Assembly: GCA_001179505.1 (NCBI GenBank)
Contig: CDMY01000835.1
Location: 1 to 16,198 of the forward strand
Source: Vitrella brassicaformis CCMP3155
Lineage: Eukaryota; Protista; Chromerida
Length of the DNA stretch: 16,198 nucleotides
Reading direction: 5' to 3'
Each line of letters starts with the position of its first letter. Position 1 is the first letter of the stretch. A program made the translations under genes and the position numbers. Below the pieces are notes generated by a model, which was given only the letters and a program-made list of their open reading frames with translations, searched no databases and was not told the DNA's origin. This document shows, in pieces, positions 1,171-13,270 of this stretch.

Positions 1171-2214
1171 CCATCAGTCGGGGATGCGCAGCGACTGGAC
1201 AATCGACAGCGCCCTGACATCATCACCACACACACACACACACACGATATCTCTTTGTCCCTGTCTCTCTTCATTGCTGTCTCACTTGTCGCACGGCCTT
1301 CGCACCGGTCCTCCCCCATTGTGTTGTGCGCTTGAAGTGAACGCCCACCAGAACATCCGGCCGCTCGTGACGATTTTCAGGTTGGCCATCGCAGCGCACA
1401 CCTCACGCGCCAACTCATCGTCAGCCGCAGCCTCACGCTCAGCACACACACTGACACACAGACAGTGACAGAGACACACACACTTTTTAGAGAGCGAGAG
1501 AGAGAGAGCTTACGTGTGTTCGTGTTGTGGTATGTTGATGAGTGTGGTGTGTTGCAGGTCGACCTCCAATTGGCGCCACTCAGACGACGACGGACGCACT
1601 CGAGACACACTCACCTGACAATGAAACACATCCAGCCATCCACATCCACACTTGTGTGTGGTCTCATTGTCACTTGTGTGTGGTCGAGTCCGGCCAGCTC
1701 TGCGATGGACAGCGGCGCGACATTGGACCAACACAGCGCACCCACGTCGACACAGAGACTCTCATCCACGGCTTTGCACGGCAGCCTGCAGATCACAGAC
1801 ACACAGACGCACAGACATGCAAATCTCTGTCTGTCTGTCTGTCTGTCTGAGTGGATTGCGTGCCGTGCGACGAGTGTGTCTGAGAGCGTTGCGACGGATG
1901 GGCACGAGTCGACGAGCCTCGGCATCATGTCACTCCCACACACCGGCAACTTGAACACACACAGCACCTGCACACGCACACATCCATCCATTCCCTCTCT
2001 CTGTGTCTCTGTCTCATTGGCCCACCGCCGTGCTGTTGGTGGGCAGATCGGCGCCGATGTGTCCCTGCTGGATGTCCCGCTCGAGTGCGGCGAAGAGCGT
2101 CGTGGGCCGGTGGCGCTTCACCTTGGGGCGGGCCAGCGAGTCAGCTGTGGCATTGGTGGGCTCGGCGAGGGGCGGGGAGACGTTCGGGTGCAGCAAACTG
2201 ACGGTCCGCTTCAT
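1136..2214 (-). CDS. Hypothetical protein, ~242 aa, 6 exons (2026-2214, 1864-1967, 1674-1785, 1514-1614, 1306-1450, 1136-1213)
   Basis: Exons join in phase: MKRTVSLLHP...STA|VLCVFKLP...VAR|LPCKAVDE...HTQ|VSVSR...HEHT|VCAERE...GGGP|GAVDCP...NNE*. Intron 2 needs a GC donor. No domain recognised. Confidence 0.55.
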
Positions 2215-2866: not shown

Positions 2867-3573
2867 TCTCGAGCAGCCACACGCCGCACACACACTTATC
2901 CCCTTACCAGAAAGTGTCGCACACACGTGAATGCATGGCTGACTCATACGTACATACACACACGGGCTGCATGGCTGGCTGGGTGGCACGTCTCCATGTG
3001 TCTGACTCTACGATGTCATGTGTGTGTGGGGGTTACAGTGAGTGTGTTTGTGTGGACAGACAATTGAAGATCTGAGAACCGATTTCACGCAGCCTTTTTT
3101 CTTTTGCCCCGAATGCTTTTTGACCTGAAGCCTGCCCGTCCATGAGTCCCGCGTGTTCTGGCCAATACGCGCAAGCACCCCTGAACACACATACCGCCAA
3201 CCATCAAAGGCAGCAAAGGCAATCAGTCGACTTACTCGATCACACAAAACGGCACGCGGACACGCATGACGGACGGGACGAAAAATGCCGTCTCCTTACG
3301 CACACACTGTGGGAAAAATACACTCTCAGCTGGCCCCCCAGGGTGTGGCCGGCCATCCTCGAGTGCCCCATGCATTGACTACCCTCATTTCCCTCTCACA
3401 TACCGCATAGGCTTGAACGAATGTCTAAGAGCAGTGGAAAAATCACTGCTGTAAGGTGTACAGCTCTCGCAGCCATCCCGGTGGACCAGTTCGGAAGAGC
3501 AGACACTCACGCAAGGAACCAGCTCAGCCAAGGGCAGTCGGGCACAGACACTCCATCACTAAGGCCAATTTGC

Positions 3574-4751
3574 CTAAGGCTGCTCTCCGCCTCTCAGACT
3601 CACACGCGAGCCCCCGTCTTCAGCGGCTCCGGTGGTCTTGTCCTCCGTGGGCGTGCCGGCGAGCTGTTCCATGACAGAGGCGAGCTGCTTCTCCAGCGCA
3701 TTCACACGCTGCGCCAACGCGGCCTCGCGCTTCTGCAGCTCCTGCACTACGCCGGTCATCGAGTAGAACATGTGATCCTGAAAAGACAGACAGACAGACC
3801 CACACTGCGCCACCGGAACCAGCCATCCTCCGTTCCAAAATCTGCCAACTTACCATGTCGATGTACAAGGTCTCCTCAGGCTGGGGCTCCTTGTCGCCGG
3901 TCTCCTCATCGCCTTGCTCAGCCACCTGCTCGACCTCGCTGGTCACGGCCTCTGCATGAGCAGACATGGGTGAGCCTCCGTGAGGGAGATGTGTCGTTTG
4001 CCATACCTGGAAAAATCTTCTGAAGATCCTGCGCCGTCAGACCTGCGGACGTATCAGTCAGGCAGACACACTGGAGTAGTGGGTTTATTTGCCGAGGGCC
4101 TTACCGAGGTGCACTTGGCTGCCGTCCTCATCGCTGAGCCGTCTCCCCTTGTCCGGGTCGAACTGATAAGTTTTCAGTGGTATGTCGGCGAACTGGGAAG
4201 AAGACACGATAAGTGTGCGCCCATCTCGCGTGTGACGCGTCCCGAGTGGGTCGCATACCTTCTCATAGGCCTCCTCCATCGACTCAGGTGTCACGTCCTG
4301 AGCAAAAGGCAGATGCGCACACAGCACGGCCCGATGAATCCCCCAGATGCGCCGTCCTTAAACTCTGAAGGGACCTGAATGTTTCTCTTGAATTTCTCAT
4401 CCGAGATTCCTTTCAAGCCCCCAGGCGTGTAAAAAATGAAATCACTGTAGACTTTGTGAATGTTCCCCCCCCCTCTTCCTCCGATCCCACATCCAATAGT
4501 GCCTGTAGCACACAAGGCGACAGCAAAGGTGATCGTTCCTCCCATCCATCATTCTCACCCCATCCAGCCGTGAACGGCGCCGGCCCCACGGGAGCCCCCC
4601 ATTGAATCGCTAAAGCAGGATCATTCCGGCAAAACCCCTCGACCCATTTCCGGCCATTGACGGGAGGAGAGCCGCTGATGAAAGCTGCAGGAATCTGAGT
4701 GAGGCACAAGGCGACGGCCACAAGGGCAAGGGCGGCAGAGCTGCGCATCAT
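3574..4751 (-). CDS. Secreted protein with intramolecular chaperone autoprocessing domain (ICA / Peptidase S74), ~261 aa, 7 exons (4559-4751, 4375-4502, 4259-4297, 4105-4192, 4007-4042, 3854-3951, 3574-3777)
   Basis: All junctions are GT-AG and in phase. Spliced product: hydrophobic N-terminus (MMRSSAALALVAVALCLTQIPA), ISDEKFKRNIQ (S74 motif SDxxxK.NI; Ser codon 4402-4404, Lys codon 4387-4389), LKTYQF, HLGLTAQDLQKIFPEAV (GxxAQe...FPEAV), LYIDMDHMF..., and the coiled coil VVQELQKREAALAQRVNALEKQL. Alternative start at 4796. The last residues are uncertain (possible donor after 3604). Confidence 0.85.
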
Positions 4752-5235
4752 GATGAATGACGAGATAGCGAGGGAGACGGGACGAGGGCGCAACATCCAA
4801 AAATCCCTGGGACTCCTCTTTGGGACTGCCTGGTGAATTTACAGGATTGAGGCAGGATGGGTTGCGGATGTGTTGCTGATCTAAACCCTAACTATTCTGT
4901 AATTACACGCAGACACACGCACGGGTGGGCTGTGTACTAGTTAGTTAAGCAAGAGAGAGAGAGGGGCGCGTCTGTGCGTGTGTGTGTGTGATGCAATCCT
5001 GCACACCCACACACACGACTAGTGCAACACACTCGATCAGTCAGCGCCCGCCATCCAGTCATTCACCCGTATGTGTTTGTGCGCTGCCTTTGCAGTGCAG
5101 TGCAACCCCCTCCACATGAGCGCATCGGACTGTGTGTCTGCGTTCGTGTGTAAACACTGCACTGATGGATGTGGCGCAGACAGACAGGAAGGATGTGGTG
5201 AGGTGGTACATACTGCCAGCCGCACCGCACAGACC

Positions 5236-5687: not shown

Positions 5688-6848
5688 CTATCGCTTGATG
5701 GGCCGTGCCTGCACAAAGGCCCCGAACCGACTGCAGTCGCCGAAGGGCCTCCCCTCTGCGTCGCGCAAGAAGTGGTCGCGCATGTCCTCGTGGTCCCAGT
5801 GATGCACCACCTCGAAGTCATGCTGCTTGAGCATTTTGTTGACCTCGCCCTTGACGATGCCATAAGTGATGGGCGTCTTGTTGCGCTTCATCATCTCTAC
5901 CACCCTGGACCAGAAGGGATCCACGGCCCCATCGATGAGGGCCTTGTCGATGTAGCTGCACACCACACCACACCACACCAGGACACACATCATCACATGT
6001 CGGGATGGGATCGGTCCATGTCTGTCTGTCTGTCTGTCTGTCTGTGTGGCTGCTCACTCAAATGTGATGGTGCTGTCCACCGACAGACTCTGAGAGGCCA
6101 CAATCAAATGATGCCCACACAACCAGACAGAGAGAGGACTGGACATCCACCACACATAAGCACAGAATGGTACTTACCCTCACGGCGGCCAGTGTGGCTG
6201 CGACGCCCTCTTCCGTCAAGTACATGGTCACACCCTCCCAGATGAAGAGGCTCCTCTGCCCTCTGACGAAGCCAGCGTCCAGCAGCACACTCTCGAGGCT
6301 CTCTGTGTTGAAGTCGCACGACACGAAGCGCACGTCCTCGTACGACGCAGGGTCCACCGAACGGTGCTGGACACCCACACGCAGACACACAAACACACTC
6401 ACCTGAAGGACTTCTTGTGTGTGTGTGTGTGTGTGTGGTTCAGGCGGTGTTCAGGTCCCACCCACCTTCATGAGGCTCAGTTTGTCTTGCTGCACGGCCT
6501 GCTGGTCAACTTCGAACATCTTGACGGCATGCTGCTTGCGGAGACCGGCGAACCGGTGCCACCGCGTGTCATAACCTGACCACACCACACCACACACACG
6601 CAGAGAGACGGAGGGAGAAAGGGAGGATGCCAATGGATGAGTGTGGTCGTATTGCCTCGCTCGCTCACCGGCTCCCAGTATGACGAGCTGCAGCGGCACT
6701 TTATCGGTTGCCGCGGCCTCAACGCCATCCTGAATCAGCTTGTCGACCAGCTTGGTACGGGCTGACGCATCGAACGGAGAGCACAGGGAGATGCAGACAT
6801 CCTGCCTGCCTGTGTGTGTCCGTACCGAAGATGCTTGCCGCGCCCTGC

Positions 6849-6884
<36 letters not shown>

Positions 6885-7313
6885 GCCGGATGCATCAAGT
6901 GGATCGGGAGGTGCACACATTGGTGGGCTATTGCTCGCGTACGCCGCCCTTCCACTTGTCGCTCCACTGTATGAGGCGGATCAGCCAGCTTGTGGGCAGC
7001 AGCATGTACAGCTGGACGAGCCACCAATACCTGTACCTGAGCCAACCAAAGCCAGGAAAGAGAGAGGCATCTGTCTGTCTGTCTGTCTGTCTGTCCATGT
7101 CATTGCCTCTTTCTCCTTTGCTCACGAGATGAATCGCGCGATGGCGGCTCGTTCGCTAATGGGCAGGTCGCACGGTGGCGGCAGCTTCGTCATAACGTAT
7201 CGGGCGCCACACACCGCTTCTGCGTTGAATGAACGAACGTTTCTTTCGGATCTGAGAATGGAAGTCCGTATGAACAACCACTCCCTCACGAACATGCTGA
7301 ACTGGGCACCCAT
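5688..7313 (-). CDS. Class I SAM-dependent methyltransferase, LCM (leucine carboxyl methyltransferase-like) family, ~330 aa, 8 exons (7126-7313, 6943-7036, 6826-6844, 6669-6761, 6466-6575, 6178-6366, 6058-6089, 5688-5955)
   Basis: Spliced motifs in the expected order: FARTKLVD, QLVILGAGYDTR, MFEVDQ, VRFVSCDF, LFIWEGVTMYL, ITFDYID. All introns are GT-AG and in phase, including a 19-nt exon. Confidence 0.88.
6853..6885. repeat. (GACA)n intronic microsatellite
   Basis: About 8 tandem GACA units. Similar arrays occur at ~1827-1849, ~6020-6044 and ~7071-7094. Confidence 0.9.
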
Positions 7314-7540: not shown

Positions 7541-8822
7541 ATGGCCTCAGCGGAGCTCCGCGAGGCCATGAGCCGCCTCTCCCATCGCAATGCCACCCGT
7601 ATGCAAAGGAACAGAGAGCAGTTTTCTCTGCGCCTGTGTGCGCGTGTGCATGCGCGTGCATTGATGTGTTCTGGCAGGGTATGAGTCAAAGCCGAAGGAA
7701 GGCAACAGCGACTTCTCCTTCTATCGCCAGGGGCCCTCACCCACCGGTAGCTCCAGCGTTGACAGAAGCCGCTCACATGCTCATTGTGCTTACGCTGTCT
7801 GCAGACGCATCATGTCAGAGCCAGCCCACGGTCGCATCGAGCACCGACGGATGCGAAGTTGATGAGGCCCCCACCGTGGCCGCCACGGGTTTTGTCCGTG
7901 AGCGAGCGGCCTCCATTGAGTCAGCCTCTGCCCACCCAAAGGACAAGGGCAGGCAGCAGCAGCAGCAGCAGCAGGAGCAGGAGCAGGAGGATAAGAGGGC
8001 ACCAAGGCCGGCCACAGCCTCTGTGGATGGGTGTGGTGAGAAGGACGAGAAAATGGAGGGGCAGGGGAAGACTGACATCCAAGGAGGGGAGAAAAAGGGT
8101 CGGTCGGCTGCCCTGCCTGGAGGCACGCATGTGCATTGTCCCTCCATGTCCGTCGGTGTTGTTTTGCTCAGTCGAGTTGGCTTGGACGAGCACTATCGTG
8201 TTGTTTTCGCTGGCCTCTTCCGTTGCGAACCCTCTGCCCAAGACCGTCGAGCGACTGTCATTCCACGGCAGGTACAAAAAAGACATGCGATGAAGGGATT
8301 TTTCTCTCATCACGTACAACAGTGTCTTTCGCTCTCAGGGTGGAGAAGCGCGCGTATCTGTATTCGCTCCAAGATGCTGTCTCCAGCGCCAAGGAGAACT
8401 GGCTGCAGGTCAGGTCACCTGATTGATGCGATGCACATGTGTGTATGCAGGTCAGGCGCCAGTTGTCACTTGTGTGTCTGTGTTGGCTGGTTGGTGTGTC
8501 AGGCTGAAAGGGATGAGCTCGTGTATCTGTTGAGCAAGACAGACATGACCATCGAAGCGTTCAATCAACGGTACACGAGACACAGAGACACATGACCAAT
8601 GGAGTCAAGGGGCCTCATTGAGTGTCTTTGTGCAGGGTGCGGGATGCTGTGGAGAAGTCAGGGAGCAACGAGGGGTCCTCTCGAGAGGTCAGTTCGCGCA
8701 GGTCGCATACCAACCGCTCACTCACGCTTGCACGTCTACACTCCCCTGCTGTCTGCCCACAGGTGTTGGATGCGCAGCGAGACGCCATTCTGAAGACTTA
8801 CTACGAGAAGGGCTTCGAGTGA
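7541..8822 (+). CDS. Hypothetical protein, ~256 aa, 8 exons (7541-7598, 7678-7746, 7805-8098, 8172-8271, 8339-8408, 8503-8570, 8636-8687, 8763-8822)
   Basis: All seven introns are GT-AG and in phase. The N-half is low complexity with a polyQ/E tract; the C-half is helical-looking (VELAWTSTIVLF...AERDELVYLLSK...LKTYYEKGFE*). No family recognised. Confidence 0.7.
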
Positions 8823-10095: not shown

Positions 10096-13000
10096 TCAGC
10101 CACGCACCTTGGTGGGCCCCTCGCCTCCCGCCATGTCGGCAGCGCCGCCCTTGTGCGTGTCTTTCTCGCCATCCAGCACGCTCACCGGCACCTCGTCGCC
10201 ACCGCTCCCAACGTCCGTCTCCTTGGTCACAGTGCGCGCCGCCGTGCTATCCCCGCCGCCAACCCCAGTCTCCCCCTCGGCTGCACGCGGCCCCTCATTC
10301 GCTGCCTGGTGGCCAGATTGTGGCAGTTGGCTGTGTTGTTGGTTGTGCTGCTGGACCGCAGCGCCGCTCAAATTGGATCTGGCAGTGGGTGAGCCGCTGC
10401 TGCCCGTTGCCGAGTCCGTGTAGAGGGGCGGTGGGGTGTGGGTGGTCTGCGTGTGAGTGGGTGAGCCGCCCTTGGGGCTGCCGTGGTTGGGGGGCTCGAT
10501 CTTTTGCAGGCGGAGGTTGGATGAGACGAGCACGACGTAGGTGATGAGGTAGTAGGCCAGGAGGAGCAGCAGGAGAGAGATGCAGCAGCTGGCCACGGTG
10601 GTCTGGTCGAACGACAGACGGGCCAGCACCTCCTCGCCGGTGCGCAGGCAGCCCTGAATGGACACACACACACAGACACATATCAAAGAGAGAGACGTTA
10701 GGGTAAGTGTGTGTGTGTGTGTGTGTGTGCACCGGTTGGTCAGCATAGTCGCATTCGAACTTGAGCCCCGTGAATTCGTTGATGCAAAGGGCCTCAAAGC
10801 CCCACCTTGTGGGCAAAAAGGCCGACACGGGTACATGATATAGCACGACAACTGAGCAAACACGTCTGTGTGTACCTGATGAGCGAGATGTTGTCGAGCC
10901 ATCTGAAGACCCACGGAATGTTGTCGGGGTTGATGTAGTAGCCGCCGAAGACGATGAATATCACCATCACCGCAGGAGCTATCGCCATCGCTGCCTCATA
11001 GGACGGGCAAAACGCACTGATGCTGCACCGAAGACGCACACATGATGAGTACAGTGAGGCCGTGTGTGTGTGTGTGTGTGGCAGAACCGTACCAGAGTCC
11101 AAATGCCGATGCGACGAACGACTCGAGTGTGATGGTGGCGATGAAGAAGAGGAACCGCATGAACGAGGGATTCAGCCCCGCCAGCGGATACATCACCGCG
11201 CCGAAGAAACAAGGGAAAAACGCACCTATACACACACACAGACACACACACACAGACACACGTGTGGGCAGATGCCCACGCATCCCCTGTGTGCATTTCT
11301 CTCTCGTCGCACCCACCTATGGGCAGTTCTGCGGCGAGTTTGGCAATGAAGTAGGGCGTGACTCGGTAGAGCTTCGCCTCCCTCTCTCGAGTGACGACCT
11401 CCCTCTCCCGCACAAACACCGTGATGGTCTTGATCAGTGATGACATCGCACCATTGATCGCCGCTACCTGCACATAAACACACGCACATCCATCCATCCA
11501 TCCACTCATCCTGGATGTCCGATTATGGATCACCTGCAGGAGTCCGAGTCTGTCCTGAATGTGCGACTGGAAGTTCTGGATCCTGAAGAAGATCGAGCCG
11601 AACACGATGGCCGAGAACAGCGCGCTGCCGAACCGACTCTGGTTCGTAAACTTGTCCCGAGACACCTGACAAGATGACACACACATAGCCATTCACTCAT
11701 CCATCTGTGTGTGTGTGTGTGTGTGCACACCTGCCTCCAGGAGCGCATGAAGAGGAGTGCGAACTGCTCCCACAGTGGCGCCAGGGGGGCCGTGATGACT
11801 GACGGGCGGATGTTGAACGCCGAAGGGGCGCTGAAGAGCGTCCTGGGGGACAGACAGACACAATCGCACCCGCATAGATTGACTACAGTGGAGGGCGGGA
11901 TGTTCAGATTTGCCCACCCGCTCTTGATGGCCTCTTGGTGAATGGGGTTGCTGTCCCTGCAGGCGGTCACCAGCTGCTGCACGCGAGCACGGCTTGACTC
12001 CTCAGCCTAGCAGCACCACACCACACCCACCACAGATAGGCAGACATGCACGGTTCGTGTGTTTTGCGGGAATGCAATCAATCAAGTCGCTCTCACCTCG
12101 GTGGATGTGAAGTCGATGGAGGCCAGGTCGACGCAGAACTCAGCCAGGTTGTAGTTGGGCGGGCACTGGTGGCCCAGACGGCTGAAGTGCCCCACCATGT
12201 CGCTGGCCAGACCGCAGTACACCTGCACACACATGGTATTCGTTAGCTGGTAGAGTGTGTGTGTGTGTGCGTGTGTGTGTGTGGTTGTTGTGTCGGTTGG
12301 TTGACCTGCTCTCCCTCCGACAGGACGATGACGTCGTCGAACATGGTCCAGATGGAGCTGCGCGGCTGGTGGATGGACACTATCACCGTCTTGCCCTGGT
12401 CGTGAGCCAAGCTCCGCAGCGACGCCATCACACGCTCCGCCTGTCGACACACAGATCAACGTGCATCCCGCTGCACGGTGTGCCACTGCATATGCACCGT
12501 ACCTGAAAGGCATCGAGTCCCGTTGTTGGCTCGTCCGCGAAAATGACGGCAGGCGTGCCGACCAGCTCGCACCCTAGGCTGAGCCGCTTCTTCTCTCCTC
12601 CGCTGACCCCCCGCCTCTTATCGTCCCCCACCAGCGTGTTGGCGCACTTGGCCAGCCCCAGCTGGCTCAGCAGCTCGCCCACAAAGGCCTCCTTGTCGTT
12701 GGTCGAGTGCTTGGACGGCAGCCGCAGGCGCGCCGCCATGAGGACCGTCTCGTGGACGGTCAGCTGGCCGTAGAAGACGTCCTTCTGCTGCACGAAGGCC
12801 TGCCGGTGCGTGGACTTGGCGAGTGGGGTGCCGCCCACGATCACCTCGCCCGAGAGGGTCGCGCCCTTGACGTACGCCAGCTGGCCGGCCAGGGAGTGCA
12901 GCAGGGTCGTCTTGCCTGAGGGATCAATCAACACACACACAAACACAGACACAGCCACACACAAAACACAAGTGCATCCCTGAGTGACATGACTGCATGT

Positions 13001-13270
13001 GCTTAGCTGACCTGATCCGGATGGTCCGAGTATGGCCATGAGACATCCCGGCCTCGCCATGCCGCTGATCTCCTTCAAAATGCGGTGAGGCTGCGCCCCC
13101 TTCTTGGCGGGCAGGATGGAATAAGACAGCCGACGGAACTCAATGGTGAGTCCTGGCGCCTTGCTGCCGCCGCCGTATCCGCCATGCGTGGGGGTGAAGA
13201 CGGGCAGCAGGGGTTCCTTCTCGGCCACAGAGGGGTCGATGGCTATCTCGGGGGCTGCTGAGTCGCTCAT
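10096..13270 (-). CDS. ABCG: ABC transporter subfamily G (White-like half-transporter, NBD-TMD), ~775 aa, 12 exons (13012-13270, 12503-12915, 12306-12440, 12097-12222, 11918-12006, 11731-11842, 11534-11665, 11317-11467, 11093-11225, 10876-11022, 10733-10805, 10096-10653)
   Basis: Walker A GPSGSGKTT (spliced), signature VSGGEKKR, Walker B IFADEPTTGLD, H-loop SIHQP. ABC2-type TMD motifs QFALLFMRSWRQ, REREVVTRE, FGGYYINPDNIPWVFRWLDNISLIRWGFEALCINEF. All junctions are in phase; the 3' end is uncertain. Confidence 0.95.

What the first reader, a model, noticed from the sequence alone, without database searches (positions are those of the whole stretch)
3574..4410. Phage-tail-fibre-type self-cleaving chaperone (ICA / Peptidase S74) in an intron-rich protist gene
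Seen only after splicing six exons: I-S98-D-E-K-F-K103-R-N-I, K-T-Y-Q-F, G-L-T-A-Q-D-L-Q-K-I-F-P-E-A-V and a terminal coiled coil. Known: the ICA domain of phage tailspikes/fibres (e.g. K1F endosialidase) and of animal MYRF trimerises, drives folding of the upstream region and cleaves itself off using a Ser-x4-Lys dyad (SDxxxK). Both residues are present here. No Ndt80/MYRF DNA-binding domain or C-terminal TM is present, so this is not a MYRF orthologue. Inference: a phage-, bacterium- or giant-virus-related module domesticated long enough to carry five internal introns.
Basis: partly seen in the sequence, partly recalled or inferred. Interest (0 to 1): 0.85.

Follow-up and report, generated by a model that had tools for sequence, protein, structure and literature searches.

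The report
Spliced algal gene with phage self-cleaving domain
The alga Vitrella brassicaformis expresses a seven-exon gene for a small, probably secreted protein whose C-terminal half is the trimerising, self-cleaving "chaperone" domain known from phage tail fibres and animal MYRF; databases already label the domain, but this kind of protein is unstudied.

Summary
Spliced RNA contigs from three coded studies show all six joints exactly as modelled. The same protein is on record as P0001, Vitrella brassicaformis CCMP3155; UniRef already calls it "Peptidase S74 domain-containing protein".

- **Domain:** Pfam PF13884 matches end to end (residues 113-180, 57.5 bits against a cut-off of 22, E 1.6e-15).
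- **Fold:** the AlphaFold model of residues 111-250 is confident. Its only clear PDB matches are the four solved ICA domains: MyRF, GA-1, endoNF and T5.
- **Not MYRF:** there is no NDT80 domain, no MYRF_ICA match and no second hydrophobic segment.
- **Not a viral island:** the neighbours are cellular genes.
- **Unusual features:** an N-terminal signal-peptide-like leader and a very short, orphan, Gly-rich "passenger" of about 72 aa.

Self-cleavage, secretion and function are inferred, not shown. The donor lineage cannot be resolved, because the protein sits on a long branch at 35% identity or less. The scan had already noted about 16 S74 genes elsewhere in this genome. This is a new variant of a known kind, of moderate interest.

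The parts
4680..4796 (-).
   Evidence: This is the only hydrophobic segment of the protein. The AF2 model shows a helix at 8-32. An in-frame TAA at 4841-4839 closes the frame upstream (read). The RNA contig reaches 4832. The cleavage site is my reading; no predictor was run.
4405..4679 (-). Short 'passenger', residues about 40-112 (24% Gly, 10% Pro, Cys56 and Cys84), interrupted by intron 1 (4558-4503); it ends ...FIFYTPGGLKGI just before the cleavage serine
   Evidence: Composition. No Pfam family matches it. pLDDT is below 50. Searches found no relatives.
4402..4404 (-).
   Evidence: It aligns with endoNF S911, where the annotated mature peptide ends at residue 910, and with the S587A position of MyRF chain 7dc3. 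The position is Ser in 63 of 64 relatives.
4387..4389 (-).
   Evidence: The column is invariant in alignments A1, A2 and A4 and is Lys in 64 of 64 relatives.
3941..4404 (-). Peptidase_S74 core (residues 113-180), spread over exons 2-6 with introns 2-5 inside it
   Evidence: Pfam PF13884 E 1.6e-15, profile 1-58/58. The splice joints are confirmed.
3658..3940 (-). Rest of the ICA domain: a beta-hairpin with an acidic loop (residues 181-208) and a long C-terminal helix with a heptad pattern (209-249); intron 6 lies at 3853-3778
   Evidence: AF2 gives strands 179-185 and 201-207 and a helix 209-249, with pLDDT 88-98 for residues 201-250. The a/d positions of the helix are 92% hydrophobic. The region aligns to the C-terminal helices of phage ICA domains.
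3574..3657 (-). Low-complexity C-terminal tail (residues 250-276) and the stop codon (3576-3574)
   Evidence: pLDDT is 54-65. The relatives have no counterpart.

Best explanation
This is an expressed nuclear gene of Vitrella brassicaformis. Its 276-aa product has three parts: an N-terminal signal-peptide-like leader, a very short Gly/Pro/aromatic passenger (about residues 40-112), and a complete C-terminal intramolecular-chaperone auto-cleavage (ICA, Peptidase_S74) domain (113 to about 250) with a disordered tail.

The proposed mechanism is taken from endoNF and MyRF and is not shown here. After entry into the ER, three chains assemble through the C-terminal coiled coil and the ICA beta-strands. 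This templates folding of the short preceding segment into a trimeric stub. Ser113, activated by Lys118, then cuts the Ile112|Ser113 bond. The products would be a trimer of a fragment of about 73 residues (about 7-8 kDa per chain) and a separate ICA trimer of 164 residues per chain.

The domain was acquired long ago from a virus or bacterium, or is an old eukaryotic lineage of the domain. It is now an ordinary spliced cellular gene, one of a set of S74 genes in this alga.

Shown: the gene model, its expression and splicing, the domain identity, the conserved catalytic residues, the fold prediction and the cellular gene context. Inferred: secretion, trimerisation, cleavage and biological role.
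For: - **Gene model and splicing:**
- **Identity with the database protein:** the model equals P0001 from Vitrella, contig CDMY01000835.1.
- **Pfam:** PF13884, 57.5 bits, E 1.6e-15, full profile length.
- **Phage profiles:** PHROGs tail-fibre families match the C-terminal ends of their profiles, E down to 3.9e-14.
- **Direct similarity:** tblastn to T4-like gp37 and T5-like fibres gives about 30% identity. In 27 of the 30 listed hits the match starts at residue 112-113, the cleavage serine, and the matches run to residues 223-249.
- **Conserved columns:** D114, K118, G165, A168, Q169, P176 and V179 are invariant among 24 viral relatives and present here; S113 is conserved in at least 90%. Among 64 relatives the serine position is S in 63, the next is D in 64, and position +5 is K in 64.
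- **Model:** AF2 pLDDT is 62-98 (10-residue block means) over residues 111-250, mostly above 85.
- **Fold matches:** the 13 best Foldseek PDB hits are all ICA domains (7dc3 E 2e-6, then 3gud, 3gw6, 4uw8). VIA-align gives Z 8.5, 7.1, 6.6 and 5.7 for those four; the next chain scores 3.0.
- **ESM Atlas:** feature and structure neighbours are nearly all S74 clusters.
- **Topology:** there is a single N-terminal hydrophobic segment and a heptad helix.
- **Context:** the neighbours are cellular genes.
- **Mechanism in the model systems:** PMC3742443 and PMC8326128.
Against: - No experiment or proteomic evidence for cleavage, trimerisation or secretion exists here.
- The position after Ser+2 is Lys116, where 56 of 64 relatives have Arg (6 have Lys). 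Phe117 is also a minority residue, in 3 of 64.
- In endoNF an upstream Arg897 in the triple beta-helix is needed for cleavage (PMC8326128). No equivalent can be assigned here, because the passenger is modelled with pLDDT below 50.
- The passenger has no detectable relatives, so its conservation cannot be judged.
- The signal peptide is my reading of the sequence; no predictor was available.
- Pro at -3 of the PAA|F site is atypical, so the exact cleavage site is unsure.
Confidence: 0.7

Rival explanations
1. The protein is the same, but the leader is the bipartite signal of a complex plastid: a signal peptide followed by a transit-peptide-like stretch beginning with Phe. The ICA protein would then act in the periplastid or plastid compartments rather than being secreted.
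For: The predicted signal-peptide cleavage ..IPAA|FISGSPPVNGRK puts Phe at +1. The next roughly 40 residues are rich in Gly, Pro and Ala, and the passenger as a whole (residues 41-112) has more basic than acidic residues (6 K+R against 3 D+E). A Phe at +1 marks plastid pre-sequences in algae with red-derived complex plastids; this is my own knowledge and was not tested here.
Against: No targeting predictor was run. The stretch that would be the transit peptide continues straight into the pre-cleavage segment, and part of it (from residue 70) aligns with another S74 protein in AlphaFold DB (A0A0G4EFD7), so it looks like part of the mature protein. Two Cys residues (56 and 84) would fit an oxidising secretory route.
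Confidence: 0.12
2. The ICA domain is kept only as a trimerisation module and no longer cleaves. The full-length trimer would be the working form.
For: The motif SDEKFK departs from the consensus SDxRLK at two positions, K116 and F117. The passenger is so short that a fold-sensing trigger like endoNF Arg897 may be absent. Another scan note reports a family member without the dyad (s1-233288, not checked).
Against: Ser113, Asp114 and Lys118, the residues needed in endoNF and MyRF, are all kept. SDEK-type motifs also occur in viral relatives (L016, L029 and L046). MyRF cleaves without help from its upstream stalk (PMC8326128).
Confidence: 0.13
3. It is a recent insertion of a virus (a polinton-like virus or giant virus) or a contaminant, and not a domesticated host gene.
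For: S74 domains cap fibre proteins of polinton-like viruses integrated in many protist genomes (PMC12220804). Foldseek also matches an S74-domain protein of the algal virus Bathycoccus sp. RCC716 virus 2.
Against: The gene has six short spliceosomal introns, five of them inside the domain, all removed in RNA. The flanking genes are an ABC transporter, an LCM methyltransferase and orphan genes, with no capsid, packaging ATPase or integrase family on record. No viral or metagenomic relative exceeds about 40% identity. GC content matches the rest of the contig.
Confidence: 0.03

Closest known systems
C-terminal ICA domains of phage tailspikes and tail fibres (K1F endosialidase gp17-CTD, T5 L-shaped fibre pb1, GA-1 neck appendage, T4-like gp37 variants)
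   Same: Same Pfam family. The Ser-x4-Lys pair sits at the start of the domain. The G-x-x-A-Q-D..P-E-A-V core and the terminal coiled-coil helix are present, and the domain lies at the C-terminal end of the protein. Identity is about 30% over some 130 residues.
   Different: Phage proteins carry long fibre or enzyme passengers (a median of at least 400 aa upstream in my set) and fold in the bacterial cytoplasm. This protein has about 72 aa upstream, a signal-peptide-like leader, introns and an extra 27-aa tail.
MYRF / MrfA, the membrane-bound transcription factors of animals and Dictyostelium
   Same: Eukaryotic proteins with an ICA domain. MyRF (7dc3) is the best solved-structure match (Z 8.5, 135 of 147 residues aligned) and the only PDB sequence hit.
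   Different: There is no NDT80 DNA-binding domain, no MYRF_ICA (PF13887) match and no transmembrane segment after the domain. The ICA domain is C-terminal and predicted to lie in the ER lumen or outside the cell, not on the cytosolic face.
Fibre proteins of polinton-like viruses and algal giant viruses with a terminal S74 domain
   Same: S74 domains in or beside eukaryotic genomes, at the C-terminus of the protein (PMC12220804; BFVD hits).
   Different: Those are large modular virion fibres (up to 3.9k aa) inside viral elements. This gene is small and spliced, and its neighbours are cellular genes.
Other S74 genes of Vitrella, and small S74 proteins in AlphaFold DB
   Same: The best AlphaFold DB cluster match is a 231-aa 'Peptidase S74 domain-containing protein' (A0A0G4EFD7, 34% identity over residues 70-249), and a 318-aa one also appears. 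Scan notes list about 16 S74 genes in this genome, several described as secreted.
   Different: No paralogue could be fetched, so kinship inside the family was not tested. Word-based and profile searches found nothing close. The first 64 residues (leader and start of the passenger), the only part of the upstream half searched on its own, have no relatives.

Membership tests
Peptidase_S74 / ICA domain (PF13884) | Profile match above Pfam's gathering score over the whole model | tested here: met
   57.5 bits against a cut-off of 22, E 1.6e-15, residues 113-180, profile 1-58/58
Peptidase_S74 / ICA domain (PF13884) | Catalytic Ser and Lys five residues apart at the start of the domain | tested here: met
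   S113 and K118 align with endoNF S911/K916 and MyRF S587/K592. The Lys is invariant and the Ser is present in 63 of 64 relatives.
Peptidase_S74 / ICA domain (PF13884) | Fold of solved ICA domains, including the C-terminal coiled-coil helix | tested here: met
   The AF2 model matches 7dc3, 3gud, 3gw6 and 4uw8 at Z 8.5 to 5.7, and the next chain scores 3.0. The helix has a heptad pattern. This is a monomer prediction only.
Peptidase_S74 / ICA domain (PF13884) | Trimerisation-dependent self-cleavage before the serine | not testable with these tools
   This needs expression of wild type against S113A and K118A, or proteomics.
MYRF family | [quoted passage not shown] | tested here: not met
   No PF05224 hit at E <= 1. 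Only 112 residues lie upstream.
MYRF family | Transmembrane segment and C-terminal domain after the ICA domain; MYRF_ICA (PF13887) match | tested here: not met
   There is no hydrophobic segment beyond about residue 43 (19-residue hydropathy windows) and no PF13887 hit.
Viral tail fibre or tailspike | Long fibre or enzymatic passenger, encoded in a viral genome | tested here: not met
   The passenger is about 72 aa with no family match. The gene is spliced and has cellular neighbours.

The most novel reading that the evidence does not exclude
Vitrella, and perhaps other protists, may run ICA-assisted folding inside the secretory pathway to build a family of extracellular trimeric fibres or knobs for the cell wall or surface. 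This gene would be the minimal member: the domain would act as a single-use folding and release device for a trimer of about 73 residues per chain. That would be a third cellular use of the phage domain, beside virion fibres and MYRF, and a compact natural model for studying how ICA domains work.
Probability: 0.3. Interest if true: 0.6.

Novelty: new variant of a known kind. Interest (0 to 1): 0.45.

Why it matters
In the papers I could search, the ICA domain is studied in phage fibres and, among cellular eukaryotic proteins, in MYRF and its Dictyostelium orthologue MrfA, where it is treated as a striking case of reuse. This is a spliced, expressed, non-MYRF eukaryotic gene that carries the complete domain behind a signal peptide, with an unusually small cargo. 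It suggests that the domain has been reused by eukaryotes more than once, and in a different cell compartment. At 276 aa it would be a convenient system for testing how little upstream sequence an ICA domain needs in order to trimerise and cut. The gain is limited: databases already label the domain, the function is unknown, and the scan had already flagged this gene family elsewhere in the same genome.

Tried and rejected
- **Single exons against Pfam and PDB sequences:** no S74 hit, because the pieces are too short. The test worked only after the full protein was recovered by searching exon 1 against the representative library.
- **Paralogues and orthologues:** whole-protein and domain-only word searches returned only the protein itself. 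A profile search returned 931 hits; none of the 120 listed carries a eukaryotic name, and the few with source names are marine (TARA, an uncultured Mediterranean phage). A search of earlier findings by sequence was blank. There is no second copy in the window. Family size and intron conservation are therefore untested.
- **Donor lineage:** a single-protein scan of viral contigs found nothing. Profile scans gave 43 viral and 147 metagenomic relatives at 23-40% identity. In a tree of 65 ICA domains the protein sits on a 1.5-substitution branch inside no supported group.
- **Passenger alone in the ESM Atlas:** scores of 0.84 or less and TM below 0.35, so uninformative.
- **NCBIfam:** no hit.
- **Exon-1 hits P0002-P0004:** these are repetitive, low-complexity proteins and were set aside as spurious.
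- **Literature:** no paper on S74 in chromerids was found.

Full report
**What is in the sequence**

The feature lies on the minus strand. Seven exons join into a 786-nt frame with no stop:
- 4751-4559
- 4502-4375
- 4297-4259
- 4192-4105
- 4042-4007
- 3951-3854
- 3777-3574

All six introns begin GT and end AG and are 55-77 nt long. All the quoted motifs are in the translation.

**Is the splicing real?**

Public runs that hold this stretch were found and laid on 3300-5000. Contigs of runs X1, X6 and X7, from three coded studies, skip exactly the six predicted introns (56, 77, 66, 62, 55 and 76 nt, all CT..AC on the plus strand). One X6 contig of 1634 nt runs from 3300 to 4832 with all six removed. 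The mRNA is therefore made, is spliced as modelled, and keeps the frame. Run X5 holds unspliced pieces, which could be DNA or pre-mRNA.

**Which organism and which protein**

Single exons gave no family match. I therefore searched exon 1 against the representative library and recovered P0001, 276 aa and 100% identical. P0001 equals my spliced product plus 15 residues from an upstream ATG at 4796. An in-frame TAA at 4841-4839 closes the frame above that ATG.

P0001 is recorded as an unnamed protein of Vitrella brassicaformis CCMP3155. UniRef calls it "Peptidase S74 domain-containing protein". The window is the whole contig CDMY01000835.1.

**Domain identity**

Several independent lines agree.
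- Pfam PF13884 matches residues 113-180 over the full profile, at 57.5 bits (cut-off 22) and E 1.6e-15. The K1F endosialidase C-terminal domain scores 40 bits in the same call.
- PHROGs tail-fibre families match residues of about 105-248 to the C-terminal ends of their profiles, with E down to 3.9e-14.
- tblastn finds T4-like gp37 and T5-like fibres at about 30% identity. In 27 of the 30 listed hits the match begins at residue 112-113, the cleavage serine, and the matches run on into the terminal helix.
- In an alignment with 24 non-redundant viral relatives, D114, K118, G165, A168, Q169, P176 and V179 are invariant and present here, and S113 is conserved in at least 90%.
- Among 64 relatives the motif is S (63), D (64), x, R (56) or K (6), L (58) or F (3), K (64). 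The protein here reads S-D-E-K-F-K, a minority but natural variant.

**Fold**

An AlphaFold2 model built on that alignment is confident for residues 111-250 (10-residue block means of pLDDT 62-98, mostly above 85). It shows a helix, short strands, a hairpin and a 41-residue terminal helix. Residues 33-110 have pLDDT below 50, apart from 61-64.

Foldseek against the PDB puts only ICA structures in the first 13 places: MyRF 7dc3 at E 2e-6, then GA-1 3gud, endoNF 3gw6 and T5 4uw8. VIA-align gives Z 8.5, 7.1, 6.6 and 5.7 for these four, and 3.0 for the next chain.

A phmmer search of PDB sequences aligns S113 with the S587A position of the MyRF crystal construct, and K118 with K592. Neighbours in the ESM Atlas, AlphaFold DB and BFVD are nearly all S74 proteins.

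**What it is not**

It is not a MYRF orthologue. There is no NDT80 or MYRF_ICA hit, and the only hydrophobic segment is N-terminal.

It is not a viral island. The called neighbours are an ABC transporter, an LCM methyltransferase and orphan genes, and GC content is even across the contig.

**Architecture and likely mechanism**

The protein reads as follows:
- a leader (basic start, hydrophobic core, ..IPAA|F);
- a passenger of about 72 residues, 24% Gly, with two Cys;
- the ICA domain from S113;
- an acidic hairpin loop;
- a coiled-coil helix whose a/d positions are 92% hydrophobic;
- a 27-residue tail.

In endoNF and MyRF, three ICA chains assemble and the Ser-Lys pair then cuts just before the serine. 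In MyRF the coiled coil drives trimerisation and no upstream residue is needed. In endoNF, Arg897 of the upstream beta-helix takes part (PMC3742443; PMC8326128).

By analogy, I propose entry into the ER, trimerisation, folding of a short trimeric stub, and cleavage at Ile112|Ser113. Only the sequence and fold parts of this are shown. Secretion, trimerisation and cleavage are inferred. A Phe directly after the predicted signal-peptide site leaves plastid targeting open as a minor alternative.

**How unusual it is**

Relatives in phages, viral contigs and metagenomes carry far longer upstream parts: a median of at least 400 aa in my set, even though the loci are truncated. The short cargo and the signal-peptide-like leader set this protein apart.

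No close relative exists in 5.8 billion proteins, in IMG/VR or in metagenomes; identity never exceeds 40%. In a tree of 65 ICA domains the protein is a long branch in no supported group, so the donor cannot be named.

S74-capped fibres are common in polinton-like viruses of protists (PMC12220804), and at least one algal giant virus (a Bathycoccus virus) appears among the BFVD matches. These are plausible sources, but not demonstrated ones.

**What was known already**

The domain label exists in UniRef. I found no paper on S74 proteins in chromerids, or on secreted cellular eukaryotic ICA proteins.

The scan had noted this kind of gene before on other DNA of the same genome: 16 notes, one followed up as an "undescribed gene family". 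I could not fetch those paralogues, so the family claim rests on those notes and on two AlphaFold DB matches.

**Verdict**

This is a new variant of a known kind and is of moderate interest. The decisive work is a wild-type against S113A/K118A cleavage test, a trimer model, localisation, and a family-wide phylogeny.

Noticed in passing
window 4193-4258 (intron 3): Intron 3 is 66 nt long, in frame and free of stops. If retained it would add 22 residues inside the S74 core without breaking the frame (ORF 4085-4327). Only run X5 holds the unspliced form, which may be DNA.
   Followed up: partly
window 3756-3812 and 4953-5000: Contig depth jumps 5- to 100-fold at a (GACA)n run in intron 6 and at a (TG)n tract upstream of the gene. 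Many loose ends there lead to other places, so these are simple repeats shared across the genome.
   Followed up: no
window 4680-4690 (residues 36-40 of P0001): Phe follows the predicted signal-peptide cleavage site (..IPAA|FISG). This resembles the motif of plastid-targeted proteins in algae with complex plastids. No predictor was available.
   Followed up: no
L005:601-912 and L010:2501-2812 (T5-like phage fibres): These tail-fibre ICA domains read I-C-D-E-R-L-K, with Cys in place of the usual catalytic Ser. This was 1 of 64 non-redundant relatives.
   Followed up: no
window 10096-13270 (-), 5688-7193 (-), 7541-8822 (+), 1174-2214 (-): Other called genes on the contig are an ABC transporter (ABC_tran + ABC2_membrane), an LCM-family methyltransferase and two proteins without any family.
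   Followed up: no
IMG/VR loci L009, L014, L023, L025, L029, L031, L034, L035, L039, L044, L046: A group of viral fibre-like proteins of about 370-540 aa ends the passenger with a shared G-N-[IV]-T-A-[YF]-G-[ST] strand directly before the SD..LK cleavage motif. The hosts are unknown.
   Followed up: no
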